Source of the DNA: Schmidtea polychroa
Taxonomy: Eukaryota
Assembly (NCBI GenBank): GCA_044892525.1
Contig: CM097886.1
Location: 83,514,001 to 83,578,000, forward strand
DNA length: 64,000 nt
Reading direction: 5' to 3'
The notes beneath the pieces were generated by a model. The model had not been told where the DNA came from and ran no database searches. It saw only the letters and a list, made by a program, of their open reading frames with translations. Positions within the stretch are counted from its first letter, which is position 1. The number at the start of each line of letters is the position of its first letter. Shown piece by piece: positions 1,716 to 30,732 of this stretch. Position numbers and translations under genes: made by a program.

Positions 1716-1929
1716 GTTCATTAATTATTTTATTATTATTTATTAATCCCATTCACGTATCTTTTATGGTGTATATATTCATTATCTGTTTATACAAGAC
1801 ATGTTGACAACCAAATTTTATTTTTTGTTCACACTTGATCTGTTTTTTCAGTATTTTATCTATTTTCATTACGACTGTTAAAATGTTACTAGAAAATCCT
1901 CTAAGTTGTTTTGAAAAACATTTAGGGTA

Positions 1930-3351: not shown

Positions 3352-5077
3352 CTTTAAAGTTTCAAAACTCAAAATCTCGATATTTAATCACCGAAACACG
3401 CTGATGATTTTTATCAAATTTTGTCTTTATATATGTGTGACACATTAATCACATACTTTTCGAAATAGTTTCTTTGAACAAATTTTTGAACGAACAAATG
3501 ACATTTTACATTCTACTTCCGTAGCTTGACATAACGCTGTCGTAACTGTCCACAAGAAATGATTAATGATACATCAATTTAAAATTGCTAAATTTCTTTA
3601 TCGATTCTCACTTATACCTATTCGGGAAATGTTGGTATTAAAATTTTGTATTTTAACTAATTTTGCACTCAAATTTTAATTGATTATATTTTAAATTCTA
3701 TTTAAACAAATTCCTTTAAATAATTTTTTTTTAACAAGAATTTTGGAAATTGATTTTCATCACAAATTTTAATTAATTTATTCAATTAGAAAATAGACCA
3801 TATTTTATATTTTAAATTAATTTGATTGGATTATTTTTTTAAAAAAAAATAAAAAAAGATAAAACAAAAAAATAACAAAAAGAATGTCGATGAATAATTT
3901 GTTAGCGATTTCTTTACAAATTATCCATTTATTTTCAATAAGTAACCTCAAATAAGAAAACAATTTAAACATGATTTTTGTTATACCAATAACTGCAAAT
4001 CATGGAATGATAAATATGTCATCACATTTTTGATAATTATTTAGACCATATGATATATTCTATTGAACATGTGAATGAAATGTACTTCATTAAATTCTAA
4101 TTGTTTTTTCAATTAGAATAACGAAGTTGTATGAGATTGATCCAATATTTGACTAATTTTAGCTCTAAATTGCGTAAATCGCCCAACANNNNNNNNNNNN
4201 NNNNNNNNNNNNNNNNNNNNNNNNNNNNNNNNNNNNNNNNNNNNNNNNNNNNNNNNNNNNNNNNNNNNNNNNNNNNNNNNNNNNNNNNNNNNNNNNNNNN
4301 NNNNNNNNNNNNNNNNNNNNNNNNNNNNNNNNNNNNNNNNNNNNNNNNNNNNNNNNNNNNNNNNNNNNNNNNNNNNNNNNNNNNNNNNNNNNNNNNNNNN
4401 NNNNNNNNNNNNNNNNNNNNNNNNTGGACAATCTTTTAATGGCATGCTTCGTGATTCGTAGAATAACGTTTTTTTATCTCCAAAATTGTTTGATTGAAAG
4501 CATCAAAGTCAATGGATGAAACAAGTACAGGCAACCACATATGGCTAAGGATCGTCAAATCATTAATGGTACGCTACCTGTATCTTTAGAAGTAAAAGCA
4601 GAAATATTAGCAAATGCTCTTTCCCTTCGAAATAAATAAAATGTTTCATTCTCTTTTGTAAAAGATAGCAATCACAAGTGACCACAACACAAATACGTGT
4701 TTTTATGCACTTATGTAGCAGAACTAGCATTTTTAAGAAATAAATTTAATAAAAATATATCAAATTTTTAACAAAACTAGTTTTTTATAGAAACATATCC
4801 AGTAATATAGGACAGAGTTTTGATTAAATAAAAGTTGACTCCAATTCATTATTTATAGTGTTTTAAGAAATATAATCAAAGATAAATTTCAATTAATAAG
4901 CAATGCAGTTACGAATGAGAAACTAGTGTTGTTAAGACTACAACTGTCTTTTTTAAACTCAACTTTTTTGCTATTTTTTTCAATTATTTTTTATAATTAT
5001 ATTTTTTATAATTATTATATTTATAATATTATAATATTTTCAATATTTTTTTCAATTGAACATTTTTATACTTTACT

Positions 5078-5696
5078 TAAGGTGACCAGACATTTTGGCG
5101 CGACAGTCCCGATTTTTCACGATTTATCACGCGTCCCGCAACGTTTTTCAAAAGTCCCGACTTTTAGAATTAAGTTAAATTTTATATTTATGAAAATCAT
5201 TGTTTTGCATTCTAAGAATCCCACGGACTACTAAGACTAACATATTGCTTTTCTTACCCAGTTACATTGTATTTGTTTCTCAAATGATACACTTCGTGTT
5301 CGTACTGCGTGCTAGGAAGCTAATTAAACAAATAACTATTACAAATCTGCTACTTACCATAGAAAATTAAGGTAAGTAATTTATATATTTCGTAAATACA
5401 TAAATTTTCTCAAACTTAGCCTAAAATACTCGTAGTCTTCAATTTCAAGTATATCACTGACCCTAATCTTAAAAGAAATTTTAGAAAGAAATATAAAAAC
5501 AAAATTTTGCAAATATTTTAAGTTAATCAAACTAATAATATGTCAAGGAGTAAAATATTATACAATTTTTTATATTTATAAATTGTACTTATGTTAAAAA
5601 TCAAAAAATATTACCATATTATTTTTATTCTATATGAAAATTTTTGTTGATACCCCCCTTCTCCCGCTTTGCCCATCTAAAAATCAGGTCACCTTA
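5078..5696. mobile_element. hAT MITE, about 620 bp
   Basis: TIR TAAGGTGACC / GGTCACCTTA; 8-bp TSD ACTTTACT / ATTTTACT (7/8). Confidence 0.82.
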
Positions 5697-5935
5697 ATTT
5701 TACTTGAATTATATATTGTTCAATTGAACATTTTTATATTTTGAAATTTAATTTATTTACTTGAACTTAACACAATTCCACTTGAAGATTAGTATACTCC
5801 CATAATACAAGTGTATATAGAAGACATAGATATATACATTCAGAAACTGGAATTTGATAATTATAGATATATAGATATAGTAATATCTAATCAAGCAAAA
5901 CTTACAACCAATAGAACGTATATTTTATTATGTAG

Positions 5936-6261
5936 GAAATTTCAATGAATATGTTATGGAATTTCGTGATGCAATAGAAAGTTTCATTAGGTTGCAAATA
6001 ATAAAAACTCAAGAAATAGAAAGTACAGATTCTGGTGAATTGACTCAAGTTTATCCGCTAATTCAGATGGGTCTATTTGGAATTATGCAAGACCAGATTG
6101 TCCTTAAGAAATTATTTGAAACTCTTAGTCGGGAAGGAGGCAAACAGATGTCCGTTGCACTTACGTCCGGATATTTTAATTTAGACGATGACAATGAAAA
6201 TTTATTATTTGAAATAGCTAAAAGAAATGTTTCAATCGAGGTTCTAACAGCAGCTCCTGAA
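5936..6261 (+). CDS. PGS1: PGS1 exon 5
   Basis: TGTAG acceptor; ...TQVYPLIQMGLFGI...LTSGYFNL...EVLTAAPE matches PGS1 'YPLIQM', 'TTGYFNL' and 'LASPE'. GTTGGT donor at 6262. Confidence 0.92.
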
Positions 6262-8429
6262 GTTGGTTCTTATTTTTCTTGTTTTAAGTTCGAGATTATA
6301 TTTTTAATTAATTTCCCAATTTAAATATTAGATAAATTTTTTAATTTGCTTTATCTTCATGCATTTTCAGGCTAATTATATCAATATTTTGTTTTATATA
6401 TGGCATGATTTTTCGACATTGCTTTTTCAAGGTCGAAAATAAATTTAATTTATTAATTTAATAAAATGAAAAATAAAATCATCTTAATAAAATTAATTAA
6501 TTAATTAAAATAGAAAAAGAAATTTGAATGCTATATTTTCTTTTTTTGTCTCTTAAATTAAATTAATTAATTCAATCATTAATTTAAAAATAAAGATGAA
6601 AAAGAAAATCAAAATTTTACATTATTTTAAATTATTTTAATAAATTAATTAAAATATATGAAAGAAAAATTGGTTTTTACATGGCATTATTTTTCGACAT
6701 TAGTTTTTTCAAATTTTTTTTTAATAAAAGACAACTACGAAAAGGATTAAAGATTTTACTGATAAATAAATTTAAAATAATTAATCAAAAAATAAAAAAC
6801 CACATTTTAGGATTTTATATTTTATTTTAATAAAATTAATTAATTGAAATATAAAAAAGAAAGATGAAAAAATTCTACATTTTCTTTTCTTTTAAAATAA
6901 ATTTAATTAATTAAAAAATAAAAACTAGAAATTTTCATTTTCATTAATTAATATAAAAAAGATTAATACATATTTTAAATTAGAACAAAAAATATTTGAA
7001 TACTATATTGCCTTGTCTTACATTTAATTAATTAATTATTTAATTTAATAAAAATAATTAAAAAAAAATCTATTAGATAAATTAAATCGAATTTATTAAA
7101 AAGCAAACAAAAAACAAGATATTCTTAATTTAATTAATTTAATTAATTAAAAAATATTATAAAAATTTGTTTTATATGTATCACGATTTTTTGACACTGC
7201 TTTTTTCCAAAAGTTGAATAAAGATCAATGGTGTAAAAGATAAAAGATTTTATTGAAAAAGAATTTAATTAATTAATCTAGTCAATCTATTTATTATTAT
7301 CAATCTATTTATTAATTCAATCTATTTATTATTCCATTTATTAATCCAATCTATTTATTATTCTATTTATTAATCTAATCTATTTATTAATCTATTTATT
7401 AATCAAACTTACGCATATGAAACATATTTTAAAAATGGATGAAATTAGAAGAATACTCCAGATGCAAATGTTCACTATCCCGCAAATGAATTTAACCAAT
7501 GGGATATTGTACTAATGTCAAGACGAAGAAATCGAAATTAGGGGGTTTTATGAAGATGGAGTTTGGACAATTGTTGAAAGATGTGATTCAAACACATTTT
7601 TGATTAGAAATAATCTTATAGAAGCTGTATAGAAAAACAGGTTGAAAAAATGTTCATTCAAATAAATTATATTGTAATGAAATACTCGTAATTTAGTTGA
7701 AAATGAAACCTAATGAATCCTGCTTAACAAATATGTCGAATTATTTTACATTAAATATGTTATCAAATGAAACATATTTCAAGGAAATTATCCTCATTTT
7801 TAGTCTGCCATAATAATCTATGTCAAAAGTTATATACAGAAACAATAATGACGTAATGAGTTAAAAATTAAATAATCTCAATAAATTCTTTGCTGATTCA
7901 ATATTAGATGTATGGAATTGTATTAATAATACCGATGTCTCACTTATTGTTAATTTTAATAATTAATAATTAATTGGTAATTTTAATATCATAATTGACC
8001 CAAAATTGACTACTAGTGCATCGTTCAGAATATTTATTGCTGGTAGATCTTTTGTACAGAATATTTTCATCCGTTGCATTACCATTTTCCAACACCAGTC
8101 ATTATTTCCGGACTTTATCTGTCAAAGGTTATAGTAATCAGTGTTAGTAGATAGATGTGTGGACTCCAGCCCAACAGGAATCTTCAACTCTCACAAACTT
8201 TTTTTGGACTTCTGACATCCCCTACTTTTTTTAAAATTTTGTTTTAATTATCGATTACACAATAATTTTATTTTGTTTAAATCTCTTATTATGTCATCAA
8301 TTTTCATTTTATAAGATTTTTTTATGTCAATATACTTGAAATTAAATTCTCTATTAAATGATAATATGACGTAATCAAAATTGTTAAATTTCATTTTTAG
8401 TGCACCATTTTTGAATTTACACATCTTTT

Positions 8430-9300
8430 TAAACAACTTGAGATATTTTCACTCAAACAATATATAGATAGAATTTAAATCTCTACAAAATGATATTATT
8501 ATTTATTTCAAATTCACGATCATAACACATTGAACAATGCCTTTTTCAGCCAACTTTTACATACATCATTTACTATACTCATCATTTGCTTCTCATTAAA
8601 TTATTTGTTTCTTCATGTTATTCATAAATTTCAAGACTAAAATTCAAACGAGCAACAGACATAATTTTATGAAAAACTGTGACAGATTTACACGCAGTTC
8701 AAAATTGTACAAATGATTCCAAAAGTTCTTATAACACCTGCTTTATAGTTGAAATTCAATTTTGACATATTTTCCTAATTATATTGATATTCATTGCTCG
8801 TAATTCGCTGGTTCTGCATCACATATATTCGATTGATAAAAATAGCTTCTCGACTGAGATAGACTTAGAAACTTCGAAATAGATCAAAAAATATGTATTC
8901 AAAACAATATTGATTACTACTATTAAAACAAGTTTTTGTACTTGCAATAATCCACAATAAATTCAAATTCCAAATTAAACTGTAAATAGGAAACCATAAT
9001 TTCCAATATACGCACCTATTAAAATAAATATAACTTAGGTGCATCAAAATATAAACATCTATACAAGAACATGTAAAGGTTCAAAAATAGTAGCACTTCG
9101 TTGAGTTGAGACACGTAGGAAAAAAGCACCATTGATTCCAAATCTTTTTACATATTTTTCTATGCTCAATAATAACTCCCATCCTCTCAATCGGCTATGT
9201 TCCTGAAGCCATATGCGAAGATTTAGAAAGCGGATAAATTTTCTTGGGTAATTTGATTCAGAATTTTCTTAACTGTCAATTAAATTATCAATATCCAATA
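8430..9300 (-). pseudogene. Probable decayed piggyBac transposase inside PGS1 intron 5
   Basis: Minus-strand fragments in expected order: DNLIDS (cf. DNFFTS), MASGT*PIER (cf. A.GT.R.NR), NYKAGV (cf. YN...GVD), KRHCSMCY (Cys-rich C-terminus). Many stops and frameshifts. Confidence 0.4.
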
Positions 9301-11727
9301 TTCAATATCCAATCAAATTACAAAAAATTTTTCCGAAAAAATTGCAACTGAGTTTAGTTGAAAACCTTTTCACTTTCAAAGTGTAACTATCTATCTCTCT
9401 TTATCTTTTTTTAGTAGTGCTTTAAATAAAATTGATGCTTTAAATAGTGCACAAATTTTCGTTTTTTGCCAATTATACTAAGTCTAAATGCGTTTTTAGA
9501 TCATGTATCCACATTTATTACTTTGATTCTGTAAGCAAGATCAATATTATTTTACCATTGTTACAGTTATATACATTACAATTTTATTAGTTCATTTCAA
9601 GTTAAAAGACCGTTTCATTTTCCAAAAATAGAAATAATTAATATTTATTTCTTGCAATTTTGCAACCTCCACATAACATTAAAATTTATCGCATTTTTAT
9701 GTCATATCATGAAGGGAAAATTAAAAAAAAATAACTTAAAAAACTGGCAAATAAATATTTTATATTAAAAATCTATTATTACACTTGATTTTCGATGTAT
9801 TTATTATCAATAAATTATTCTATTGATTTTGAATATTGATTTTCATTTTATTCAATGAATCAATTCAATATATTAATTCACTAATATTAAATATATTGAA
9901 TTTATTGATTGTTTTAATGAAAATCTTAGAAAAAAGAAATTCCAGATTTATTATATTTCATCAAAAATAAATGTCTCGTAAGATTTTTGTTATTGGGAAT
10001 TTGTAATGTGTTACTAGAGTTAATGAACAATAATCAATTAAATTCTGTTTCGTTTCCCGGGAAATACTTATTTAAATTCTCAAAGAATCCAGTTTCTCGC
10101 AGCGTAAATCGCTAAATTAACTGAAAACACATTTTCTAGTTGATAAAATTTGTTTTTCTCCTTTTAGCAATTAAAATAATTTTTATCCATTATAGGTTTG
10201 TTATTTTTTTATTATTTTCTCTTATATGCAATGCAAATTAAATTTCTATCGTTAACTATGAATAAAATGAAGCTAGCAGACGCATTATGGGATTATTATA
10301 TAAATTAAAAACATTTCGTGTTCAGTTACACTGAATCCAGTAAATGCCATATTAAGTCACCTACTTATGTCTACACCAGAGGTTTTAAATGCTTCCTATT
10401 ATTTTTCTATAAATGGATTTTGAAAAACAAAATTATAATTTATATATTTTTTTCTAATAAAGCGCCACTCAAACATTCGTTTTACGATATAATTCGCCAG
10501 TTTTCCTGTCATCATCGGGTAGATAAAGAACAATAAATATTATTTCAAATTTAATTTAAATAATCAATTATATATCAATTTATACTAAATATATTTATAG
10601 ATTTTAAAATATTTTATTTTAATATAATTTTTAATCTATAAATCTTTAATTAAATTGAAATTTATAATTATTCAACTTAATAACTTAAACTTTTGAAATT
10701 AATAGCTATTCTCATATCCACAATTAAAAACCCAAACTATTTAAAAACATTCAAAATACAAAATATAGTCGATTGAATAGATCGACTAAAATTTAAGAAA
10801 ACAATAAATGTATGAGAAAAATCCGAATTAATACATTTTAATGATTATTGGGAACGTGTAATTGTGAGCGGAAATTATTGTTCAAAATGCTGTGAAAACT
10901 TATGTTTTGCATGTCTTTAAACAAATTTTTTCTGTTTTTCTTTAGTAAATGCCATTATTTTTTATATAGGAAAATTTCCAAAACTTATTTGAAAATAATA
11001 TTGTTTAAATGTTATATTGTGATCAGTCGGTGGAAATAACTATTTGTGTTAAATTTGTTTATTGAAATCGGTAATAAATTATATATTATATTTAAGAATT
11101 TTAAATTCAAGTAATTTTACTTAAGATCAATAGTTGCATTAATATTATTAATTACCATACCTCAGCTGTTTAAATTATCAGAAAAAAGAGAATTTTAAAT
11201 TTAACATATATAGTATACCAAAGCGTATAAATTATGTGCAACAAAGCCAAATATTATCGCAGGTGGTAAGTTCATATTTCTATTTTTCTATATTTATAAA
11301 ATTTTTATTAAAATTAAAATTTCGTATTTATTATGAATTTCTGGTCATTTCTGACAATTTATGAAAATGTAAAAATTTATTTAAATACTTTTTTTGAAGA
11401 TATTAAAAAATGTTTTCAATTACTATTCTCCCGGGAATTTTGTTTTATACGATCTCGACGTAATTTTTTCCTTGTTCAGTAATATTTCAATTATAAAAAA
11501 GTGTTGTTGCAATTTTTGTAACTGAATTATAATTACATTGATTACATTTGCGTCTCTTTTACTCATTGAAAGTTGGAATGGGATAAAGCGCTAGAAAAAC
11601 TCTCAAATCGCATATTTTTATAATTAAAAAATCCTGTAATAAATGTCTACCCATAATTTTGTGCTATATATTGTTATGATAAGGTATTTTTCTCGTTGAA
11701 ATTATAATTTGCCATTATGCAGTTAAT

Positions 11728-11914
11728 GCCGTAATTTATTCCAGTGCTCTTAATATTTGTCCTTATACGGTAAATGCCCGTAATTTATTCCAGTGCCCTT
11801 AATATTTGTCCTTATATGGTAAATGCCCGTAATTTATTCCAGTGCCCTTAATATTTGTCCTTATATGGTAAATACCCGTAATTTATTCCAATTCCCTTAA
11901 TATTTGTCCTTATT
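11728..11914. repeat. 49-bp tandem repeat x4
   Basis: Unit CCCGTAATTTATTCCAGTGCCCTTAATATTTGTCCTTATATGGTAAATG starting at 11728, 11777, 11826, 11875. Confidence 0.95.
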
Positions 11915-12307
11915 TAAAATAAATATTTATTTTTTCTGTACATTATTTTATTATGTTTCGTACTATACCTTGGTTTATGGTTAAACATACCGTAATTTGT
12001 GTGGTTTGGTGTAAATATACCGTAATGAAATAATTAAAAATATACTTTAATCTAATGGAGTCCATTTATACATCAAGGTTATTGTTATTACAAGAAATTT
12101 GTGGTGAATAAATAAATAATATTATTGGCTCTTGAATTGAATTTTGAAAATAAAAAACTTGTTGAATCTTGTTATTTTAAATAAAGAAAAATACAGTCGG
12201 ATAGTGTTTTAAAATTTTGGCAGAAATTGTTATAAACATTATATTATTTCATAATTGCTTCACTATATCAAAACTCCAAATTTTCAACGAATATAATTTT
12301 CTAACAG

Positions 12308-12712
12308 GCAAATGGCTTTTTTAAAGCTAGAGGTGCTATGAAATATATTCCAGATGTATATACGAATATACTTTTTGATTTTCAAACGAGGTCATTAAAT
12401 CTACCGATTAAAACATTTGAATGGAGGAAAAATAATTGGACATTTCACGCCAAAGGATTTTGGATAAGTAAACTAATTTCAGATTATACTCGTATTTATG
12501 TGACATTGATTGGATCAACGAATTACGGGTACAGGTCGTGTTTTAGGGATTTGGAAACTGAGATACTCATAGAAACCCAATCAGAAAAATTGCAGAAAGA
12601 ATTAACAGAGGAAAAAAATCGAATATATTGCAATGGATTGGAAACAGAAAATCAAAGAGTGATACCGAGTTGGATTCCCTGGGTTGTACCAATAGTGAAA
12701 TATTTTTTCTAA
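12308..12712 (+). CDS. PGS1: PGS1 exon 6 (last exon, second degenerate HKD)
   Basis: CTAACAG acceptor; ANGFFKARGAMKYIPDVY...WTFHAKGFW...TLIGSTNYGYRSCFRDLE...WVVPIVKYFF*. The six exons sum to 1392 nt (463 aa + stop) in frame. Confidence 0.95.
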   Translation, partial: ANGFFKARGAMKYIPDVYTNILFDFQTRSLNLPIKTFEWRKNNWTFHAKGFWISKLISDYTRIYVTLIGSTNYGYRSCFRDLETEILIETQSEKLQKELTEEKNRIYCNGLETENQRVIPSWIPWVVPIVKYFF

Positions 12713-16566: not shown

Positions 16567-17102
16567 TAAAATTCTTCATTAAATTTTATTTTAGTTTTTT
16601 TACTCAAAAATTTCTCTTCTCTTAATTATTTCGCTCCGAACTGCCAATTTTTCCTTTCCTAATTATTCACTATGAAATATCCTAATCCGAATTGGCTCGT
16701 TTAAGGAAAAAGTTGCCCATAAAAAACATTAATCGCGATTTTTGACAAATTTTACTTTCAAACATTAAATGCAGATTTTTCAGTACCTATTTTTAAGTAT
16801 TTTTTTGAAAGGTGTTTCAGCACTTAAAAAGTTTTGTCAAAATTTGTGATTTTTAAAGAAAAATATTGATCAATTTCTTAATCTTTTTTTTGATCAATTT
16901 TTTGAACCATCTGAGGCTTATTTATTTAGTAGATCAACCGACTTTATAAAGAAGAATGGATTAAAAGGTGATTCTTGAATTTTTTTTTGTGATTCACTTT
17001 ATGTGCAATTAAGCTTGCCAACTCTCAAGTTTTTGCCGGGAGTCTTGCGGAATCGGCTTTCGTCTCCCGATGAATATGACGCGGGAGATGTAAATCTCCC
17101 GT

Positions 17103-19255
17103 AGTAGGTAGTTAGTAGCGTACGGGAACAAATACCCCCCCCAGGGGGGGGGGGGGGGGTAAATTGTTCCCAACTTTTTATTACGCAATTGTTCCCAACT
17201 CATTTTTTTGCTTTCAGGGATTTTTGGTCCAAATTTTTTTTTATCAGACTATAGTGCGGGGGTCTCGATGGTCCTGGGATTTTCAATACAAATAAAATTT
17301 TTTCAATACAAAAACGATGGTCCTGGAATTTTCAATACAAAAAAAAATTTTCAATACAAAAAGCTGGTCTACACTAAAAAAGTCAAGGATTTATCAGACT
17401 ATAGTGAGGGGGTCTCGATGGTCCTAGGATTTTCAATACAAATAAAATTTTTTCAATACAAAAACGATGGTCCTGGGATTTTCAATACAAAAAATTTTTT
17501 TCAATACAAAAACGATGGTCCTGGGATTTTCAATACAAAAATCCGACTACCACTAAAAAAGCCAAGGATTTTTCAGACTATAGTGAGGTGAGTCTCCTTG
17601 GACCTGAGAAATAGCTGGTCTACACTAAAAAAGCATGGTAATTTAAGGTCTCAGGATATTTTCAATACAAAAATCCGACTACCACTAAAAAAGCCAAGGA
17701 TTTTTCAGACTATAGTGAGGTGAGTCTCCTTGGACCTGAGAAATAGCTGGTCTACACTAAAAAAGCATGGTAATTTAAGGTCTCAGGATATTTTCAATAC
17801 AAAAAGCTGGTCTACACTAAAAAAGCCAAGGATTTTTCAGACTATAGTGAGGTGGGTCTCCTTGGTCCTGAGAAAAAGGTGGTCTACACTAAAAAAACGT
17901 GGTAATTTAAGGTCTCAGGATATTTTCAATACAAAAATCCGACTATCAATAAAAAAGCATGGATTTTTCGAATTAAATTAAGGTGAGTCTCCTTGGTCCT
18001 GAGAAAAAGGTGGTCTACACTAAAAAACTTGGTAAATTTTTCAATTACAGTAAATTATGGCTCAAATTTTTGAATTACAGTAAATTATGGGTCTAAAAAA
18101 TTAAATTACAGTAAATAATGGTTCAAATTTTTCAATTACAGTAAGTAATGGGTCTAAAAATTAAATTACAGTAAATTATAGTCCAAATTTTTAAATTAAA
18201 GTAAATTATTGCTCAAATTTTTCAATTAAAGTAAATTATGGTCCTAAAAAATTAAATTACAGTAAATTATGGGTCTAAAAATTAAATTAAAGAAAATTAT
18301 GGTCAAAAATTTTGAATTACAGTAAATAATGGTCCAAATTTTTAAATTAAAGTAAATTAAGGTCCAAATTTTTAAATTAAGTAATCAATGGTAAAAAATT
18401 AAAATTAAAGTTAAATAAGTAAATTAAAGTAATAATTTTTTAAATAAGTAAATTAAAGTAAATTAAAGTAAGATTTTAAAATTTATTAACAAAAAGTTGA
18501 AATAATAGAAGGTGTTTGAGAATTGAAATTTTTTAATAGAAATTTTAATGAAATATTTTTCAATGGTAATTTTTAATGGAAATTTTTATGGAATAATTTT
18601 TTAATCCAAATTTTTAAATTAAGTAATCAATGGTAAAAAATTAAAATTAAAGTTAAATAAGTAAATTAAAGTAATAATTTTTTAAATAAGTAAATTAAAG
18701 TAAATTAAAGTAAGATTTTAAAATTTATTAACAAAAAGTTGAAATAATAGAAGGTGTTTGAGAATTGAAATTTTTTAATAGAAATTTTAATGAAATATTT
18801 TTCAATGGTAATTTTTAATGGAAATTTTTATGGAATAATTTTTTAAGTTAATTTTTAATGGAAATTTTTATGAAATATTTTTCAATGATAATTTTAGATG
18901 GAAATTTTTAAGATAATTTTTAATGAAAATTTTTATGAAATATTTTTCAAAGACAAATTTTAATAATAATTCAACAACAAACCAACAACTTAGTACCAAC
19001 AACCAGTAATTTACGAACATATATTAACAACCAGATACCTACAACTAGTTACTAACAACCAGTTACCTGATACCAGATACCTACCAACTACTTACAACCA
19101 AAATCAACCAGATACCTACAACTAGTTACTAACAACCAATTACCTGCTACCAAGTACTTACAACTAGATACCACGTACTAAATAACTCTCAAACAACCAA
19201 GTACCTACAACAAATTACCAGATACCAAGTACCTACAACTAGTTACTAACAACTA
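17103..19255 (+). repeat. Left TIR arm (about 2.15 kb, modular tandem repeats)
   Basis: Reverse complement of 24382-26767; ORF-track translations 17208-17591(+) and 26301-26684(-) are identical. Contains about 132-bp, 25-bp and 30/31-bp units and CA-rich simple repeats. Confidence 0.93.
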
Positions 19256-21686
19256 GTTACCTGATACTAAGTACCTAGAACCACCTAACAAGTACTAACA
19301 ACCAAAAACAAGCAACCAACCAGGTACCAGATACCAACTACTAAGTACCTACAACCAACATCAACCAGATACCTACAACTCGATACTAACAACCAGTTAC
19401 CTGATACCAAGTACTAACAACCAAAAACAATCAACCAACTAGCTACCACCTACCAAGCACTCAACCGTCAACAACCAGTTACTAAGCATTATTAACCAAC
19501 TACTAAGTACCTACAACCAAAAACAACCAGCTATCAACTAGATACCAAGTACTTACAACCAACATCAACCAAGTACTAAGCATTATCAACCAACTAAATA
19601 CTAAGTACTAACAACCAACCAACTAGGTACTAGATAGCAAGTACTTACAACCAACATCAACCAACTACTAAGTACTAACAACCAAAAACATACAACCAAC
19701 TAGCTACCAAGTACTAACAACCAACAACAACCAGGTACTAAGCATTAATTACCAACTACTAACTACCTACAACCTACAACTAGATACTAACAACCAGTTA
19801 CCAAGTACCTACAACCACCTACCCATTAACTAGCTACAACCAGCTAACAGCAACCAACCAAATACTAAGTACTAACAACCAACAACAACCAAGTACTAAG
19901 CATTATCAACCAACTAAATACTAAGTACTAACAACCAGCTAACAACTAGATACCTAGTACTAAGCACTGTCAACTAGATACCAAGCACTGACAACCAGAT
20001 GACCACATGAAATTATTGGTTAAATAAGTAAATTAATATTTAATTTTTAAATTAACTAATCAATGGTCTAAAATATTAAAGTTAAAGTCAATTTAAGATG
20101 AAAGTTTTCTGGGATTTTCAATGTTAATTTTAGATGCAAATCTTCGTCAATTAATCAATGACCACATGAAATTATTGGTTAAATATGAAAATAAGGATTA
20201 TATTTAGTTGTTAAGTAAATTATGGTGTAAAATTAAGAAATAAAGAATAATTAGGTAAATTAAGGATAAGTAAAGTTAAAAATTTTAAATAAGCAAATTA
20301 AGGTTCAAAATTTTAAATTAAAGAAAACAATGGTTTTAATTTTAAATTAAAGCTAAATGAGTAAATTAAAGTAATAATTTTTAAATAAGTAAATTAAAGT
20401 AAGATTTTTAAATTTATTATCAAAATATTGAATAACCACCAATTTTTTTGAGAAATGTAATTTTNNNNNNNNNNNNNNNNNNNNNNNNNNNNNNNNNNNN
20501 NNNNNNNNNNNNNNNNNNNNNNNNNNNNNNNNNNNNNNNNNNNNNNNNNNNNNNNNNNNNNNNNNNNNNNNNNNNNNNNNNNNNNNNNNNNNNNNNNNNN
20601 NNNNNNNNNNNNNNNNNNNNNNNNNNNNNNNNNNNAATCGGTTACTAAATATTTTTAACTAGGTGCTAACAAATACTTTCAACATGATACCACGTACTAA
20701 CTAACTCTCAAACAACCACATACTTACAACTAACTACTTACAATCAACTAAATATTCTTTATTGTATTTTATGAAATGCTTTTTAAATTAATATTTTTTA
20801 TACAGCTTCTATAATAATTTTAATTACAATCAGTAGAAAAACCTTTTCAAAATGTCTAAATTTGACAAAAATGTTGATTTTCATCAAAAAACCACAACTC
20901 AACCACTTTAAAACACCACGTGGAATTCAAAATAATTACAATGAAAGACTAATGAATTCTAATTTACAAAACATTCTTCTTTTAAATGATAACTACTGAC
21001 TTATTATTGCAATGTAAAAATCGCATTCAATAAATACTTATTGTTGATCAGTTTTATTATATATACTCTGACTTTATCCGACAGGATGTTTTGACCCCCT
21101 AAGGGTACAGGTCGTAAGGGTACTGGTCGTAAGGGTATTGGTAACACTCAACCACCACCTACCCATTAACTAGTTACTAAGTACTATCAACAAGCTATCA
21201 ACCAGATACCAAGTACTCACAACCGACAACAACCAGGTACTAAGCATTATCAACCTACAACTATATAACAACAATCAGTAAACAACATTGTACCTACTAC
21301 CAAATACAAGATACCAACAACTTAGTACCAACAATCAACTAACAACACATAAAAATAATAGCAATTAAATACAAAATATTCTTCATCGCATACACTATTT
21401 TCTTATCAAAATCTAAAAAGTCAACCAACTACTTACAACCTACAACTGTGTACTAACAAATTGATCTTTAAAAGCAAATACTCATCACTTGAAAAATTAG
21501 ATGGAAAATTAATTGAACTCAAGGCATCAATAACTAGGTAAAAATTGATTAAATTATTGTAAAAATTTAAAATATTCGAAATAAATATCATAAAAATTTA
21601 ATTAATGGACAGGAAAAAATTCTAGTCATCAAGTAAATAAAAAAAATATTGATCATTCAAGTTGAATCAACTAAGATAATAAATTA

Positions 21687-22338
21687 CCCTGAGTTCTTGT
21701 CTATAAGCCGCGGCTTATCTAAAAAAAAATCAACCCGACATTCATAAAAACAGTATCGGCTTATACATAAGTACGGCTTATACACAAAATATATTAAATG
21801 AAAAGGTTATGCATTTTTAAAAAAATATTTGCCCACTAATAATTTTCCTTTTAATTTAAATTCTCGATTAATCAAAGCCATCAAATTCTTCTCCTGATTC
21901 AGTATTGAAAAACTCAAGAATATCATTATAAGATGCTGGAATTTCTGATTCAATTTCGCTCTCGGATTCTTCTTCAAATTCTTCTTCGCTACAAGTGACC
22001 CTTATTGCCTCTTCATTTGAATATTCACAGATATTCGCAGCCTTAAATCCATTTTTAATGCAATCCACCGTTATTTCATCCCAGCATTCGTCGAACCAGT
22101 CTGCTACCATATGAGGGCCATTTCCTATTATGCGGTTTTGTAGACTATCTTGCTGTAAAAGATCAACGGGATGCCATTACGCACGTTGAGGTCCAATAAA
22201 TATGCGCGAAATTACTTAAAAACTTTACGGCTTATCCATGAGTCCGGCTTATCTAAGATAAAAAAAATTTTTTTTAATATATGTGATTTAGAGAAACCGG
22301 TTTATGCACGAGTCCGGCTTATAGACAAGAACTTAGGG
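21687..22338 (-). mobile_element. Internally deleted pogo element nested in the Polinton-like core
   Basis: TA TSD; TIR CCCT(G/A)AGTTCTTGTCTATAAGCCG; retains transposase C-terminus MVADWFDECWDEITVDCIKNGFKAANI...EEFDGFD* (21868-22110). Confidence 0.85.
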
Positions 22339-23499
22339 TAATAAAAACTTTGAAATAAGATCTAGTAGATAATTGATTTAGATTGAATAAATTAATTGAA
22401 ATAAAATTAATTTTAAGTATTTTTTTAAAAGTAATACATGTACTCAAATTGATTGACTGATTTCTCAATATATTCAAAAAAAATCAGTATAAATTCATTA
22501 CAATTATCAAAGTCAGCAATCTACAATAAAAATAATTATCATAAAATTCCAAAAGAGACTAGATAACTAATGATAACATCTAATAAACCAGTAAATTTAT
22601 TTAAATGACAATAATTGGTATATCCTAGTGAATTCTCCAATTTCTCATTTCCTCCCAAATATATCAATATGTAAAGATTGGTATTGTAATGATAAATACT
22701 TGTTAAAGATCATATATTCACCTCAAACTAACAAGATTCCTTAAAATCCCTTAAATGACTATATTTCTACCCTTAATTCATATTATTACAAATATTTCAC
22801 TAAAATCATCTGAAAAGCATCAAATTTCATTGAAATAACTCTATCTTTTAAGATTGATATTTTAATGATAAGTACTTGTTAAAGATCATATATTCCCTTC
22901 AGACTAATAAGATTGCTTAAACTCCCCTTTAAATGACTATAATTCTAACTTTAATTCCTATTATCATACATGTTTCACTATTGATAAAACCGGTTATAAT
23001 TAACTTTTTGTTAATCACTGTACTCGAAATTTAAAATAAATATAACTGACTAGGTCCCATTAAAAGATTAAATTTATCCATTCAATAAAATATATTTCTT
23101 CAAATGATCATTTTACCGATATTCAATCGATTTAATTACTAATTAAAATCAATCGATAGATTTCTTTCAATAAAGATCAATTTTATTTAGTTGTTGTTGA
23201 TGTTTTAAGTCCATATTTCTCAACTTTTGTCATTCTCCGTCTAAATAAAGATAAAAATAATTTAAAGTTGATATCAATCCCATTTATCTGTAAAGCTTTC
23301 ATCGTCAAAACCAAGTAAATCGATCATTATCCTTACTTAATAGAACATTGTTCTAAAACATAAATCTAAATTAATATACAATGAATTAATCACAACCTAA
23401 TAAAACGATATAATTATTATTGATACATAACTGACTAATTGACATTTCCCTTAAAACAATGATATTTTACCAACATCACCATTTAAAAAATCATATATT

Positions 23500-23760
23500 T
23501 CCATCTTAACCCATGTCTCATTAAATTTAACCGACTATATTCCAATCTTAACCCATCCTTCATTAAATTCAATCGACTATATCTCCCTTACAATGATATA
23601 TTCCCACCTTATCTGATCTCTCATTAAATCTAACCGACTATATCCCCTCAAAAGATCATATTTTCCCCATCTTAACCGATCTCTCATTAAATCTAACCGA
23701 CTATATCCCCTCAAAAGATCATATTTTCCCATCTTAACCGATCTCTCACCAAATATTTCT
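23500..23760. repeat. 63-bp tandem repeat (21-codon period on minus strand)
   Basis: TCATTAAATCTAACCGACTATATCCCC at 23621 and 23684 plus diverged or shortened copies; translates as GKYDLLRGYSRLDLMRDRLRW. Confidence 0.8.
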
Positions 23761-24381
23761 ACACTTTTAAACATCTATCCGATTATATCCCTTAATTTCC
23801 CCAAAGATTCCACCCACTTGAGCACTTTAATATATCAATCCTCTTAAAATCCTTAGAGAACTTCAAAAATATGACTTTTAATTAATTGTTATAGACACCA
23901 GACATTCTTCCATTGAAATAATTTAGTAGCTAAATAATAAGAGCCCACTAACCAATCAAAATCATGGAAGGGCAGAGGAAAAATATATTACGTTGCGGTA
24001 TTTTAAAATTAAAATTTATTTTAAAAACACATTTTGACGCTAAAGGCGACTTATGTAACAGACATAATAAACTGATTATTTTCTACAAATATTTACCATC
24101 AAATACCTAACTGGAGATGATATATATTGATTGATCATAATTCTTCATCGATTCAACCAATCATTTTCAAGCAATAACAGCAAACTAAATTTAAAGTCCC
24201 TGATTAAGTTAACTGGTTTCTTAGCTTATGTTTTAAAAGATCATCAATGTGTAAATATTCTTAGAAAATTATTGAAAAAAATTATCTAGTCAAATATATT
24301 ACAAAGTTATCATCAAAAATTTATTCTATCACTTAATTATACCTAATTGTCAATGAAATTAATTTTTATTTAAAAACTATT

Positions 24382-26767
24382 TAGTTGTTAGTAACTAGTT
24401 GTAGGTACTTGGTATCTGGTAATTTGTTGTAGGTACTTGGTTGTTTGAGAGTTATTTAGTACGTGGTATCTAGTTGTAAGTACTTGGTAGCAGGTAATTG
24501 GTTGTTAGTAACTAGTTGTAGGTATCTGGTTGATTTTGGTTGTAAGTAGTTGGTAGGTATCTGGTATCAGGTAACTGGTTGTTAGTAACTAGTTGTAGGT
24601 ATCTGGTTGTTAATATATGTTCGTAAGTTACTGGTTGTTGGTACTAAGTTGTTGGTTTGTTGTTGAATTATTATTAAAATTTGTCTTTAAAAAATATTTC
24701 ATAAAAATTTTCATTAAAAATTATCTTAAAAATTTCCATCTAAAATTATCATTGAAAAATATTTCATAAAAATTTCCATTAAAAATTAACTTAAAAAATT
24801 ATTCCATAAAAATTTCCATTAAAAATTACCATTGAAAAATATTTCATTAAAATTTCTATTAAAAAATTTCAATTCTCAAACACCTTCTATTATTTCAACT
24901 TTTTGTTAATAAATTTTAAAATCTTACTTTAATTTACTTTAATTTACTTATTTAAAAAATTATTACTTTAATTTACTTATTTAACTTTAATTTTAATTTT
25001 TTACCATTGATTACTTAATTTAAAAATTTGGACCTTAATTTACTTTATTTTAATTTTTTAGAACCTTAATTTACTTTAATTTAAAAATTTGGACCATTAT
25101 TTACTGTAATTCAAAATTTTTGACCATAATTTTCTTTAATTTAATTTTTAGACCCATAATTTACTGTAATTTAATTTTTTAGGACCTTTATTTACTTTAA
25201 TTGAAATATTTGAACCATAATTTACTGTAACTTAATTTTTTAGAACCATATTTTACTTTAATTTAATTTTTAGGACCATAATTTACTGTATTTGAAAAAT
25301 TTAGAACCATAATTTACTTTAATTTAATTTTTTAGGACCATAATTTACTGTATTTGAAAAATTTGGACCATAATTTACTGTAATTCAAAAATTTTGACCA
25401 TTATTTACTGTAATTTAATTTTTAAGAACCATAATTTACTTAAATTTAATTTTTTAGAACCATAATTTACTTTAATTTAATTTTTAGGACCATAATTTAC
25501 TTTAATTGAAAAATTTGAGCAATAATTTACTTTAATTTAATTTTTAGAAACATAATTTACTTTAATTTAAAAATTTGGACTATAATTTACTGTAATTTAA
25601 TTTTTAGACCCATTACTTACTGTAATTGAAAAATTTGAACCATTATTTACTGTAATTTAATTTTTTGACCCATAATTTACTGTAATTCAAAAATTTGAGC
25701 CATAATTTACTGTAATTGAAAAATTTACCACGTTTTTTAGTGTAGACCACCTTTTTCTCAGGACCAAGGAGACTCACCTTAATTTAATTCGAAAAATCCA
25801 TGCTTTTTTATTGATAGTCGGATTTTTGTATTGAAAATATCCTGAGACCTTAAATTACCACGTTTTTTTAGTGTAGACCACCTTTTTCTCAGGACCAAGG
25901 AGACTCACCTTAATTTAATTCGAAAAATCCATGCTTTTTTATTGATAGTCGGATTTTTGTATTGAAAATATCCTGAGACCTTAAATTACCACGTTTTTTT
26001 AGTGTAGACCACCTTTTTCTCAGGACCAAGGAGACCCACCTCACTATAGTCTGAAAAATCCTTGGCTTTTTTAGTGGTAGTCGGATTTTTGTATTGAAAA
26101 TATCCTGAGACCTTAAATTACCATGCTTTTTTAGTGTAGACCAGCTATTTCTCAGGACCAAGGAGACTCACCTCACTATAGTCTGAAAAATCCTTGGCTT
26201 TTTTTAGTGGTAGTCGGATTTTTGTATTGAAAATATCCTGAGACCTTAAATTACCATGCTTTTTTAGTGTAGACCACCTATTTCTCAGGTCCAAGGAGAC
26301 TCACCTCACTATAGTTTGAAAAATCCTTGGCTTTTTTAGTGGTAGTCGGATTTTTGTATTGAAAATCCCAGGACCATCGTTTTTGTATTGAAAAAAATTT
26401 TTTGTATTGAAAATCCCAGGACCATCGTTTTTGTATTGAAAAAATTTTATTTGTATTGAAAATCCTAGGACCATCGAGACCCCCTCACTATAGTCTGATA
26501 AATCCTTGACTTTTTTAGTGTAGACCAGCTTTTTGTATTGAAAATTTTTTTTTGTATTGAAAATTCCAGGACCATCGTTTTTGTATTGAAAAAATTTTAT
26601 TTGTATTGAAAATCCCAGGACCATCGAGACCCCCGCACTATAGTCTGATAAAAAAAAATTTGGACCAAAAATCCCTGAAAGCAAAAAAAATGAGTTGGGA
26701 ACAATTTACCCCCCCCCCCCCCCCTGGGGGGGGGGTAATTGTTCCCGTACGCTACTAACTACCTACT
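24382..26767 (-). repeat. Right TIR arm (about 2.39 kb)
   Basis: Mirror of the left arm, with more 30/31-bp units and only one copy of the 242-bp segment. Confidence 0.93.
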
Positions 26768-27219
26768 TCCCGTCTTTCCGTTTTTACAATTTTTCAAGAA
26801 AAATGTGCAGTTTTTGAACTTTTAACTTTTGAAAAAAACCCTATGTGCCATTCTTTTTAATTTAAACATTCCTGGTTTTTCTTGAGCATTAAACCTTTAA
26901 ATATACAATAGTGACAATGCTGTTGAAATATTATTATTATTATTATTAGTTATTCTAATTTTAATGTTTAATTATATTCATAATTAAAATTAAAATTGTA
27001 ATATTTATTTACGCAAAATTTTTTTCTCTAAGATTATTAAAACAAATCCGTACAACGAAATGTTTTCAATAAATTAATTAGGATTTCTGAAAACGGCCGT
27101 TTTTTCTTTTATATTAATAAAGTAAAATATAATTAAGGTAAATACATAAACAATCTCTTAAATTATTGTTTATTTATTATTTTCGTATTTAAATCATTTA
27201 TTGTTTATTAAACCACATT

Positions 27220-28880
27220 CTATTTTTTCGACTTGTTATAATAGAATTTGAGAAAAACTAGAGCATAAAGCGAATTATCTGAGAATATTGAACGAATTTT
27301 GGTACAAAAATTTGTGCAAACTGAGAAAACTCGTTCTATATCAGTAGATGTTCGTTTAATACAAAGAAGAGCATCATATAAAGAGTAAACTCCTGTTTCT
27401 GTCACTTGATCCAATTGTAGTCATTTGAGTACCTTTATTCAGCAACATGTGCCACTCATCTTGCAATGAAAGTTCTTTTGCAGCATCAGTTTGAGCATTG
27501 GATTCAACATTTAGGGTTGAATCGTCGCCATTCGTTCCAAATAATCGTGATGATAAATTTCCAGCAAAATCAATTATGAACTTAGAAGGAATACTAGAAG
27601 GATCCCCAAGACTTTTAACAAATTTGTCACATCACGATTCCATCTTTCGTCTATTCCCTTTTTGAGGTTGTAAATAGTTCACTGCTAATGTCAGAATTCA
27701 ATTCTGCGACCTTGTTATAAGTAAATCCAATAACTGATTCAGTTGTCAACAAAGTCGAATCCTGTCTACTAAGAACTTCAACTGCAAGTTTGATTGGAGC
27801 CATAGCCTGAAGAAGTGTTTCCAATCCATTGAAATCCAAATTATTTATCATTTCCAAGTTATTCAATTCCGAGAACATTTCAAATAATGCAATTTTCGCC
27901 TTTAAAATTGGCTCAATCATTGTAGGAATCAAATTCCAACGGTGTCTAACATCCAAATGAAGTTCAATGCTATGATCGTGATGTAATTTGACTTTCACTT
28001 GAAATACATGATTATGAACCGTTGATTTTTTGATAAATTTAACAAATTCCCGTGTTCTTTTTAGCAATTCATGAAAGTCAATGTTCTCATCAAATTGATC
28101 GTTAAGTATTTCCATATGTAATTTGTCAAAAGAATCCTTTTCGCTTGTATCAAGACTACCAAGATCACTTGTGTTGATTAAATTATCTCGCTTTTTATAA
28201 AGTGTATCACAGAACGCTAAATGATTTGCATGATTAATACAAAATTGACCAACAACGTCCATTATTTTCATGTATTTCTTATTTACAGCTGCACCATCTA
28301 GGGTTGAAGCTAAGATATCTTGATCTGATACTATACAAAATAATTTTAAATGATTATTCACGTTATCTGCCATGCTTTCAGCAAGACACGATCCATAAAT
28401 TCAATGAAGTTCAATCCATGAAGTTCAATGCCATGGCCGTGATGTAATTTGACTTTCTCTTGAAATATCCATAAATTCTCACGAGGCCTGTTTTAAAAGT
28501 TGTCTTTTCAATGCTCGATTTTCGTCTAGATTTCTTTGGTCATTTCAGCTCTTTTGTCGCAATAGTGATCAATAATTAACTTCATGACATCACATTCATT
28601 GGCATGAAGCTTGAATCCATTTGGCTGAATAGATTTTCTTATATAATTATTTCTAGTTATTGCGTTGATAGTTATTCCGTCAGTAGCTAAGTCTGACACA
28701 ATTTCATTTAATGATTGCTTTTGAACAAAATTCAGCAATTTTTTCATTTTCTTATTTACTGGCTGATATCTCTTGTGTATCTTCATCTTCGTCAAAAATT
28801 CCATGAGATTTCAAATGGTTTCTCAAAGAAGTTCTCAAAGAAGTTTATTTTCTTAGTAACTTTATCTTTAATTTTTGTCG
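27220..28880 (-). pseudogene. hAT transposase, frameshifted
   Basis: TLDGAAVN, CINHANHL (CxxH), LDVRHRWN (DVxTRWN), RTSTDIERVFS...KIRS...L (hAT dimerisation domain) spread over three ORFs. Confidence 0.9.
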
Positions 28881-29558: not shown

Positions 29559-29951
29559 TTACATCATATTAACAAATATACTTAGTTCGTTCAATAACGC
29601 ATCGGACAGAAACTTTTGAACAAATCGTGAGCATAATTTGCGATAGCCTAATTTCCCAATGATGTTGTGACAACTGCTAACACTTATTTTAAGTAATTCT
29701 GCTATTTCACCAACCTTAATTCGTCTTTCAGCTCGAATAATCGCCTCACATTGCGTAATTTTTTGATCGGAAATTTCAGTTGGTCTGCCAACTTTGGAAT
29801 AATCTTGGTGCACACTTTCATGACCATGCTTGAATAATGATATCCAACGATATATTGTGGATCTAAAAGGATATTTGTTACCATATGCAATTACCATATC
29901 GTGAAATATTTCATTAGACGACTTCTTTAAAAGCACATAGAATTTTATCAC
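29559..29951 (-). pseudogene. mariner transposase N-terminal (double HTH) fragment, 3'-truncated
   Basis: IKFYVLLKKSSNEIFHDMVIAYG...TIYRWISLFKHG...GRP...IRAERRIKVGEIAELLKIS...KLGYRKLCSRFVQKFL (cf. WVPR.L). Confidence 0.88.
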
Positions 29952-30732
29952 GCTTTAGATAAAAAATGGAATTATAAGTACGTACGTCAGCCAATCAGAT
30001 TATTTAATTTATACATATAAACAAACATACGTGTAGGTGTTAAAAGCAATTGGTTTGTTTGGTTTATCATGTTTCTTTTTTAGTCAGTCCCAGACATTAT
30101 TGAAGTTAACCAAACAATTATTAATTCAGTTGAAGAAGTACATAAGAAATTTTAAATCTGAAAATCCAAAAATCCTTAAAATAATTTTTATAATAAGTAT
30201 AATAATAATTGGTCAATCTTGAATTTAATTATGTATCAAGACTATGTGTCCATTGAGTATTGATTGTTTGTACAGATTTGTTTGTACAGATACAAAATTA
30301 AGGTATGTTTGATTTTTAGATTTTTATATATTTTAAATTGATTTATTTTTTTGGAGTTTAGAGAAGTTTGTTTTAAAAAAGGTTGGTGGCGAATTTTTTG
30401 GATAGAATAAAGATTTTTAAAAACATTCGTTTTTATTATGAAATGATGTAACTTAAAGAATGGATATGAATTCATAAGTGTTGACAATGATATCTTTGTT
30501 CATGTTAAATCTATCACATCTGATCGAAAAGTTCTTTTCAATAATCCCAAAGCTGACAGAGGATCGATGACTCAAATTACATTGGTGACATTTAATGCAA
30601 AAATGAAAATTTTGATGATATTGATGATGACAATTTTGATGAGTATGAAAATTCAAATGTTGACGATTATGATGTTGAGGTCAGTAAATTAAAATAAATT
30701 TAAATAAAAAGTATACGAATGAAAAATAGAAT

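What the first reader, a model, noticed from the sequence alone, without database searches (positions are those of the whole stretch)
17097..26773. 9.7-kb gene-less Polinton/Maverick-like element with giant modular TIRs
Seen: perfect 6-bp TSD (TCCCGT), 5'-AGTAG...CTACT-3' ends, and TIRs of about 2.15 and 2.39 kb, about 47% of the element. Long stretches are near-identical between arms. Known: 6-bp TSD, AG...CT ends and short terminal repeats typify Polintons, which prime replication with a protein and use a retroviral-type integrase; their TIRs are usually hundreds of bp. Inference: a recently inserted non-autonomous element with no visible pPolB, integrase, ATPase or capsid. It would depend on a helper Polinton, like a satellite or defective-interfering parasite of an endogenous virus. 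The TIR length and tandem architecture are unusual.
Basis: partly seen in the sequence, partly recalled or inferred. Interest (0 to 1): 0.85.

Follow-up and report, generated by a model that had tools for sequence, protein, structure and literature searches.

The report
Gene-less foldback transposon with Polinton-type ends
A real, intact 9.7-kb insertion of non-coding mobile DNA whose two 2-kb inverted arms are built of tandem repeats; its 6-bp target duplication and AG...CT ends fit the virus-like Polinton/Maverick elements, but no helper or second copy could be found, so that link stays an inference.

Summary
The element proper is 17103-26767. It has a perfect 6-bp TSD (TCCCGT), a 27/27 inverted tip starting 5'-AGTAG, and arms of 2,153 and 2,386 bp (47% of the element). 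The arms are 98.5-99.7% identical outside one variable 30-mer array.

The N gap (20465-20635) lies in non-coding repeat DNA. Its flanks are collinear with the module order of the arm, and no reading frame crosses it.

The element has no gene of its own. The only coding remnant (21871-22176, minus strand) belongs to a nested 652-bp pogo-type deletion derivative with its own TIRs and TA duplication.

The layout is that of foldback transposons: tip, subterminal palindrome, tandem-repeat domains and a non-coding middle. Known foldback elements make 7-10-bp duplications. A 6-bp duplication with AG...CT ends, 5/6 of the (AGT)2 end motif of vertebrate Mavericks, fits only Polinton/Maverick among the families compared.

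No pPolB, integrase or capsid gene lies in the window. No other copy was found in any searchable collection, so dependence on a helper Polinton is plausible (about 0.5) but untested. I rate it a new variant of a known kind, of moderate interest.

The parts
17097..17102 (.). left copy of the 6-bp target site duplication (TCCCGT)
26768..26773 (.). right copy of the 6-bp target site duplication (TCCCGT)
17103..26767 (.). the element proper, 9,665 bp as assembled; the length is approximate because of the N gap
17103..19255 (+). left terminal inverted repeat (arm), 2,153 bp
24382..26767 (-). right terminal inverted repeat (arm), 2,386 bp
17103..17123 (+). left 21-nt tip, 5'-AGTAGG..., with GTAG three times in the first 16 nt; part of the 27-nt perfect inverted terminus
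26747..26767 (-). right 21-nt tip, identical to the left one
17124..17171 (+). left subterminal palindrome, 48 nt (GGGAACAA..C8-A-G16..TTGTTCCC); single-strand DNA fold -20.3 kcal/mol, z -3.9
26697..26746 (-). right subterminal palindrome, 50 nt (C10 instead of C8); fold -24.9 kcal/mol, z -5.7
17240..18035 (+). left outer tandem-repeat domain: 150-bp/48-bp units, then 132-bp units x3.9; carries 12 perfect copies of the 13-mer TTTTCAATACAAA
25725..26652 (-). right outer tandem-repeat domain: 131-bp units x4.9, then 150/48-bp units; carries 13 perfect copies of the same 13-mer
18034..18384 (+). left AT-rich 30-bp array, 11.7 copies
24979..25721 (-). right AT-rich 30-bp array, 24.6 copies; this is the main length difference between the arms
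18363..18846 (+). perfect 242-bp x2 tandem duplication, present in the left arm only (one copy on the right at about 24791-25032)
19025..20005 (+). C/A-rich 14/28-bp minisatellite; 19025-19255 is the inner end of the left arm, and the array runs on about 750 bp beyond the arm (right-arm counterpart 24384-24656)
20020..21300 (+). diverged (74-87%) direct second copy of inner-arm modules 18257-19960; contains the N gap 20465-20635
21301..24381 (.). unique non-coding middle domain; holds a 63-bp tandem array at 23494-23748 and a direct repeat 22657-22802 / 22833-22980
21687..22338 (-). nested, internally deleted pogo/Tigger-type transposon, 652 bp; 28-nt inverted arms (96%) that include the flanking TA and a few flank bases, TA duplication at 21685-21686 and 22339-22340; not part of the host element's own machinery
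21871..22176 (-). remnant of the pogo-type DDE_1 transposase gene: C-terminal 102 codons, open, with the upstream part lost by one deletion

Best explanation
This is one intact insertion of a non-coding, non-autonomous DNA element with foldback architecture.

Shown:
- Each end has a 21-nt tip starting 5'-AGTAG, then a 48-50-nt C/G-centred palindrome.
- About 2 kb of tandem-repeat modules follow. They include 25 perfectly conserved 13-mers, all with the same orientation relative to their end.
- A 5.1-kb non-coding middle lies between the arms. It holds a diverged extra copy of inner-arm modules and a nested pogo-type remnant.
- The element encodes nothing that could move it.

Inferred:
- It was inserted by an enzyme that makes 6-bp staggered cuts and recognises AG...CT ends. 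Among the families compared, that is the retroviral-type integrase of Polinton/Maverick elements supplied in trans, so this would be a hitch-hiker on a resident Polinton family.
- The tip with its reiterated GTAG would be the cis site for integration and perhaps for protein-primed copying.
- The arrayed 13-mers and the palindrome would be multiple binding or structure sites.
- The near-identity of the arms, next to a 13-26% diverged internal copy of the same modules, would be kept by arm-to-arm pairing during copying or by gene conversion.
For: - Perfect 6-bp TSD and a 27/27 inverted tip.
- 6-bp TSD is the Polinton value; Ginger elements make 4-5 bp (PMC10045372).
- Vertebrate Mavericks have 6-bp TSDs and the end motifs (AGT)2//(ACT)2 or (AG)3//(CT)3 (PMC8097293). 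This element has AGTAGG//CCTACT, a 5/6 match with P about 0.006 by composition.
- Polinton TIRs reach 1,447 bp in vertebrates and about 2 kb in butterflies.
- No coding capacity of its own: the arm ORFs have no homologue among 5.8 billion proteins and no Pfam family. The ten longest stop-free stretches of the interior give nothing.
- The only real coding piece belongs to a nested pogo-type element with its own TIRs and TA TSD.
- The other 6-bp families fail on other features. IS3EU/GingerRoot has TA..TA ends. Dada has no TIRs and targets small-RNA genes, and none is present here.
- The architecture matches the published foldback scheme, which is said to arise by gene loss and TIR elongation in different lineages (PMC4079207).
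Against: - No Polinton gene lies in the element or anywhere in the 64 kb.
- No second copy or autonomous partner was found, so the link rests on one TSD and a few terminal bases.
- Tandem-repeat arms with arrayed short motifs are typical of cut-and-paste foldback elements of the Mutator and P superfamilies, not a described Polinton trait.
- The tip is only 5/6 of the vertebrate motif, and the host is not a vertebrate as far as can be told.
- Three copies of one 4-mer in 16 nt occur by chance in 5-10% of cases in this AT-rich sequence.
- The gap length is only an estimate.
Confidence: 0.5

Rival explanations
1. It is a foldback-type non-autonomous cut-and-paste transposon. A DDE transposase of some other superfamily, known or undescribed, mobilises it and happens to make 6-bp duplications. 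It has no link to Polintons.
For: - The layout (tip, tandem-repeat outer domain, inner domain, non-coding middle) is that of FB/Tetris and Galileo (PMC4079207; PMC3573991).
- The 25 perfect, uniformly oriented 13-mers look like arrayed transposase-binding sites.
- No Polinton gene or partner was found.
Against: - Described foldback elements make 8-10-bp (Tetris, Mutator-type) or 7-bp (Galileo, P) duplications.
- The 6-bp families compared have other ends or no TIRs.
- The AGTAG start fits the Maverick end motif.
Confidence: 0.3
2. It is an assembly artefact. The inverted arms, or the join across the N gap, are products of short-read scaffolding of repeats rather than one real element.
For: - The window has eight N gaps.
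- The gap lies in repeat DNA.
- The left arm has a perfect 242-bp x2 duplication.
- Repeat copy numbers differ between the arms.
Against: - Identical 6-bp flanks and identical 27-nt tips at both ends, next to unique host DNA, are not expected from a mis-join.
- The arms differ by substitutions and by unit number, so they are not one collapsed copy.
Confidence: 0.05
3. It is an autonomous or partly coding element whose genes are hidden in the N gap, because the gap is much longer than the estimated 171 bp.
For: Gap lengths are only estimates. The reference arm has 370 bp where this copy shows 199 bp.
Against: Both gap flanks are collinear pieces of the same repeat-module series. That points to a few hundred missing bases of repeats, not to kilobases of genes. 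The sequence on either side is non-coding.
Confidence: 0.04

Closest known systems
Polinton/Maverick elements (and their non-autonomous derivatives)
   Same: 6-bp TSD, 5'-AG...CT-3' ends, an AGT-type reiterated start (5/6 of the (AGT)2 motif) and long TIRs.
   Different: It has no pPolB, integrase, ATPase, protease or capsid genes. The arms are made of tandem-repeat modules and take up 47% of the element. It has a subterminal C/G palindrome. It is about half the usual 15-20 kb. No helper was identified.
Foldback elements: Drosophila FB and Tetris (Mutator-type)
   Same: Terminal unique domain, tandem-repeat outer domain, inner domain and a non-coding middle domain. Non-autonomous, and few structurally complete copies (PMC4079207).
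   Different: Tetris makes 8-10-bp TSDs; this element makes 6 bp. The arms here are longer (2.2-2.4 kb). The ends are AG...CT.
Galileo (P superfamily)
   Same: Long, internally repetitive TIRs that resemble Foldback, with TIR length varying between copies (PMC3573991).
   Different: Galileo has 7-bp TSDs, TIRs up to about 1.2 kb and a P-type transposase in complete copies.
IS3EU/GingerRoot
   Same: 6-bp TSD and an integrase-related transposase lineage (PMC10045372).
   Different: Its ends are TA..TA (rarely TG..CA), not AG..CT.
Dada
   Same: 6-7-bp TSD (PMC3706591).
   Different: Dada has no TIRs and inserts into snRNA or tRNA genes. This element has 2-kb TIRs and no small-RNA gene at the target.

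Membership tests
Polinton/Maverick | 6-bp target site duplication | tested here: met
   TCCCGT on both sides; definition from PMC8097293, PMC10045372 and PMC8969392.
Polinton/Maverick | 5'-AG...CT-3' ends with a short reiterated end motif such as (AGT)2 or (AG)3 | tested here: inconclusive
   The AG...CT ends are met. AGTAGG matches 5/6 of (AGT)2 (P about 0.006). GTAG occurs three times in 16 nt, but that is expected by chance in 5-10% of cases. The motif is defined on vertebrate elements.
Polinton/Maverick | terminal inverted repeats of hundreds of bp to 1-2 kb | tested here: met
   Arms of 2,153 and 2,386 bp. Published range is 46-1,447 bp in vertebrates and about 2 kb in butterflies.
Polinton/Maverick | [quoted passage not shown] | tested here: not met
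   No Pfam hit in the stop-free stretches scanned (the longest in the element, and those of at least 85 codons in the window). This is expected for a non-autonomous derivative, but it bars filing the element as a Polinton proper.
Polinton/Maverick | retroviral-type (rve) integrase gene | tested here: not met
   None in the element or the window.
Polinton/Maverick | capsid, packaging ATPase and protease genes | tested here: not met
   None in the element or the window.
Non-autonomous Polinton derivative | shares its termini with an autonomous Polinton of the same genome | not testable with these tools
   The rest of the genome is not available. No match to the tip or to arm repeats in JGI metagenomes or IMG/VR. 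The arm ORF is not on record and has no homologue.
Foldback-type elements (structural class) | long TIRs with a terminal domain, a tandem-repeat domain and an inner domain, around a non-coding middle domain | tested here: met
   scheme from PMC4079207.
Foldback elements of Mutator type (FB, Tetris) or P type (Galileo) | TSD of 8-10 bp (Mutator type) or 7 bp (Galileo) | tested here: not met
   The TSD is exactly 6 bp; 7- and 8-bp readings of the flanks fail.
IS3EU/GingerRoot | TA..TA (or TG..CA) termini with a 6-bp TSD | tested here: not met
   The TSD length fits, but the ends are AG..CT.
Dada | no TIRs; insertion at fixed sites in snRNA or tRNA genes | tested here: not met
   The element has 2-kb TIRs. 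Rfam and ARAGORN find no RNA gene in the window.
pogo/Tigger (for the nested element 21687-22338 only) | TA duplication, short TIRs, DDE_1 transposase | tested here: met
   TA on both sides and 28-nt inverted arms at 96% that take in the TA. The 102-codon remnant matches the C-termini of DDE_1 proteins. It is 93.5% identical over 416 nt to contigs that carry HTH_Tnp_Tc5 + DDE_1 genes.

The most novel reading that the evidence does not exclude
A foldback-shaped, entirely non-coding hyperparasite of an endogenous virus-like Polinton. It would keep only the cis signals (the AGTAG tip, the palindrome and the arrayed 13-mers). It would borrow the helper's integrase, and possibly its protein-primed copying. 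This would show that self-synthesising virus-like elements spawn MITE/foldback-type satellites, as cut-and-paste transposons do.
Probability: 0.2. Interest if true: 0.7.

Novelty: new variant of a known kind. Interest (0 to 1): 0.4.

Why it matters
If the Polinton link holds, the element isolates the minimal cis signals that a Polinton integrase, and perhaps its replication machinery, needs. Those signals are a 21-nt tip, a subterminal palindrome and arrayed 13-mers.

It would also extend the foldback route, gene loss plus TIR elongation, to a virus-like class. I found that route described only for the Mutator and P superfamilies.

Either way, 2-kb near-identical inverted arms are substrates for hairpins, inversions and assembly errors. 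Annotation pipelines that rely on protein homology would miss such an element.

If the link fails, this is an ordinary orphan foldback element with an unusual TSD length.

Tried and rejected
Looking for other copies or a helper:
- Exact look-up of the arm ORF gave nothing, and its homology search gave no hit among 5.8 billion proteins.
- Tip and arm-repeat patterns found nothing in JGI metagenomes (both scans used) or in IMG/VR.
- No fragment of the element lies elsewhere in the window, and the flanks are unique.

Identifying the organism failed:
- Exact look-ups of window ORFs were not on record, and two look-ups were never sent because the queue was full.
- The neighbouring hAT-like ORF gave only a 46% hit to a bdelloid rotifer protein.
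- The host-gene exon gave 35-40% hits that only confirm a phosphatidylglycerophosphate-synthase-type gene.

Rejected readings:
- The 127-142-codon ORFs in the arms are not genes. They are by-products of stop-free tandem repeats.
- The 102-codon stretch is not a gene of the element. It belongs to the nested pogo-type insertion.
- The flanks do not allow a 7-, 8- or TA-type TSD.
- The reiterated tip is not significant on its own.

Not available: the founding Polinton paper (PMC1450207) is not held.

I did not fetch known Polinton or adintovirus sequences as comparators, because these are animal virus-like elements.

Full report
**Observation.** The finding's coordinates include the target duplications. 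The element proper is 17103-26767, 9,665 bp as assembled. TCCCGT lies at 17097-17102 and again at 26768-26773. Two 6-nt flanks agree by chance with a probability of about 8e-4 at this base composition. No 7-bp, 8-bp or TA reading of the flanks works.

The first 27 nt, starting 5'-AGTAGGTAG, occur exactly twice in the 64-kb window, once at each end in inverted orientation. There are no mismatches, and none are expected by chance.

The arms are 17103-19255 (2,153 bp) and 24382-26767 (2,386 bp), 47.0% of the element. The collinear blocks are as follows.

| Left arm | Right arm | Identity |
|---|---|---|
| 17103-17175 | 26767-26693 | 96% over 75 nt |
| 17187-18039 | 26706-25852 | 98.5% over 857 nt |
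| 18040-18384 | 25660-25314 | 86% (variable AT-rich 30-mer array) |
| 18605-19255 | 25032-24382 | 99.7% over 651 nt (2 mismatches) |

No other copy or fragment lies in the window, and the flanking DNA is unique.

**The assembly gap.** The window has eight N runs; the one at 20465-20635 lies inside the element. The 78 nt before it match 18698-18774 of the left arm, and the 74 nt after it match 19145-19218. Both matches are in direct orientation and in the order of the arm.

The gap therefore lies within a diverged second copy (20020-21300, 74-87% identical) of the inner-arm modules 18257-19960. The reference arm has 370 bp between those two points. This copy has 199 bp, 171 of them N, so the real length is uncertain and some repeat units are probably missing.

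Nothing coding crosses the gap. The join of the two halves depends on scaffolding. The identical TSD and tips at the two ends are independent evidence that they belong to one insertion.

**Anatomy.** Each end has a 21-nt tip and then a 48-nt (left) or 50-nt (right) imperfect palindrome. The palindrome is centred on a run of 8 or 10 C, one A and 16 G, framed by GGGAACAA and TTGTTCCC. As single-stranded DNA it folds at -20.3 and -24.9 kcal/mol, with z-scores of -3.9 and -5.7.

The repeat modules follow in this order from the tip inwards.

| Module | Left arm | Right arm |
|---|---|---|
| 150-bp units made of 48-bp subunits | present | present |
| 131/132-bp units | 3.9 copies | 4.9 copies |
| AT-rich 30-bp units | 11.7 copies | 24.6 copies |
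| 242-bp unit | perfectly duplicated | single |
| 40-bp units | present | present |
| C/A-rich 14/28-bp minisatellite | present, runs on about 750 bp past the arm | present |

The 13-mer TTTTCAATACAAA occurs 12 times in the left arm and 13 times in the right arm. All copies are perfect and have the same orientation relative to their end. No perfect copy lies elsewhere in the window.

The middle consists of the minisatellite extension (to 20005), the diverged module copy (20020-21300) and about 3.1 kb of unique AT-rich DNA (21301-24381) with small tandem arrays.

**Coding capacity.** The 127-142-codon open frames in the arms are products of stop-free repeats. They have no Pfam family, no homologue among 5.8 billion proteins and no record. 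The ten longest stop-free stretches of the interior give no credible Pfam match.

The one real coding piece is a 102-codon stretch at 21871-22176 on the minus strand.
- Scored against 1.84 billion representatives it finds 18 relatives.
- The longer relatives carry PF03184 DDE_1 ending where the match begins, and two carry Brinker/CENP-B-type DNA-binding domains.
- The closest relative (95%) lies just after an HTH_Tnp_Tc5 + DDE_1 gene on a metagenome contig.
- That contig matches window 21685-22098 at 93.5%.

The piece belongs to a nested 652-bp pogo/Tigger-type deletion derivative at 21687-22338. This has 28-nt inverted arms (96% complementary, taking in the flanking TA) and a TA duplication. 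Its transposase gene is broken once, by a deletion that removed the upstream part; the remaining frame is open. So the 9.7-kb element has no gene of its own.

No pPolB, integrase, ATPase, protease or capsid domain appears among the window's stop-free stretches of 85 codons or more.

**What it is.** The layout is the foldback architecture described for FB, Tetris and Galileo: a terminal domain, a tandem-repeat outer domain, an inner domain and a non-coding middle. [quoted passage not shown]

Those elements make 8-10-bp or 7-bp duplications; this one makes 6 bp. Among the families compared:
- 6 bp is the value for Polinton/Maverick (PMC10045372, PMC8969392).
- IS3EU/GingerRoot also makes 6 bp but ends in TA..TA.
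- Dada makes 6-7 bp but lacks TIRs and targets snRNA or tRNA genes. Rfam and ARAGORN find none in the window.

Vertebrate Mavericks carry the end motifs (AGT)2//(ACT)2 or (AG)3//(CT)3, which are held to serve jumping-back in protein-primed replication (PMC8097293). This element has AGTAGG//CCTACT, a 5/6 match (P about 0.006). GTAG occurs three times in its first 16 nt, but that is weak evidence, being expected by chance in 5-10% of cases. Polinton TIRs of 1.4 kb and about 2 kb are on record.

**Mechanism.**
- Shown: a non-autonomous element was inserted with a 6-bp staggered cut.
- Inferred: the enzyme was a Polinton-type integrase supplied in trans.
- Inferred: the tip is its recognition site, and perhaps a replication origin.
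- Inferred: the palindrome and the arrayed 13-mers are structure or binding sites.
- Inferred: arm-to-arm pairing or gene conversion keeps the arms 98.5-99.7% alike, while the internal third copy of the same modules has drifted to 74-87%.

I put this reading at about 0.5. A foldback element of another superfamily, possibly undescribed, gets about 0.3. An assembly artefact gets about 0.05, and genes hidden in the gap about 0.04.

**Limits.** The link to Polintons rests on one TSD and a few terminal bases. No helper, second copy or empty site could be searched for, because the rest of the genome is not in any reachable collection. The organism was not identified. The hAT-like neighbour is 46% identical to a bdelloid rotifer protein, and the host gene is a CDP-diacylglycerol--glycerol-3-phosphate phosphatidyltransferase-like gene.

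One slip is declared.

**Verdict.** It is better named a foldback-type non-autonomous element with Polinton-type ends than a Polinton. I rate it a new variant of a known kind, interest 0.4.

Noticed in passing
window 21687-22338: A nested, internally deleted pogo/Tigger-type transposon with a TA duplication and 28-nt inverted arms (which take in the TA). It is 93.5% identical over 416 nt to metagenome contigs L001 and L002, which carry HTH_Tnp_Tc5 + DDE_1 genes.
   Followed up: yes
window 17063-17102, and nt 20-25 of each tip (17122-17127, 26743-26748): Three of the window's five TCTCCCG heptamers lie in the 40 bp that end in the TSD. The reverse complement of the TSD (ACGGGA) also occurs inside each tip. 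This could be a target preference or chance.
   Followed up: partly
window 18363-18846: A perfect 242-bp x2 tandem duplication in the left arm only. It is either a very recent duplication or an assembly artefact.
   Followed up: no
window 27377-28810 (-): A hAT-like transposase remnant in several stop-free pieces, just right of the insertion. Its only hit is 46% identity to a Didymodactylos carnosus (bdelloid rotifer) protein.
   Followed up: partly
window 29562-29954 (-) and 58920-59516 (-): Mariner-type remnants: a Mos1-type HTH piece and a DDE_3 catalytic piece (E 1.8e-21).
   Followed up: partly
window 46316-46609 (-): A weak GIY-YIG match (E 0.0046, below Pfam's cut-off). It may be a fragment of a retroelement-associated endonuclease.
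   Followed up: no
window ~57000-58600: A GC-rich island (49-51% GC against about 25% around it) with stop-free stretches of 99-156 codons on the plus strand. None has a Pfam family, and the origin is unknown.
   Followed up: partly
window 1161-12709 (+): A host gene with long introns: a PLD-type CDP-diacylglycerol--glycerol-3-phosphate phosphatidyltransferase-like gene. Its last coding exon ends about 4.4 kb upstream of the insertion.
   Followed up: partly
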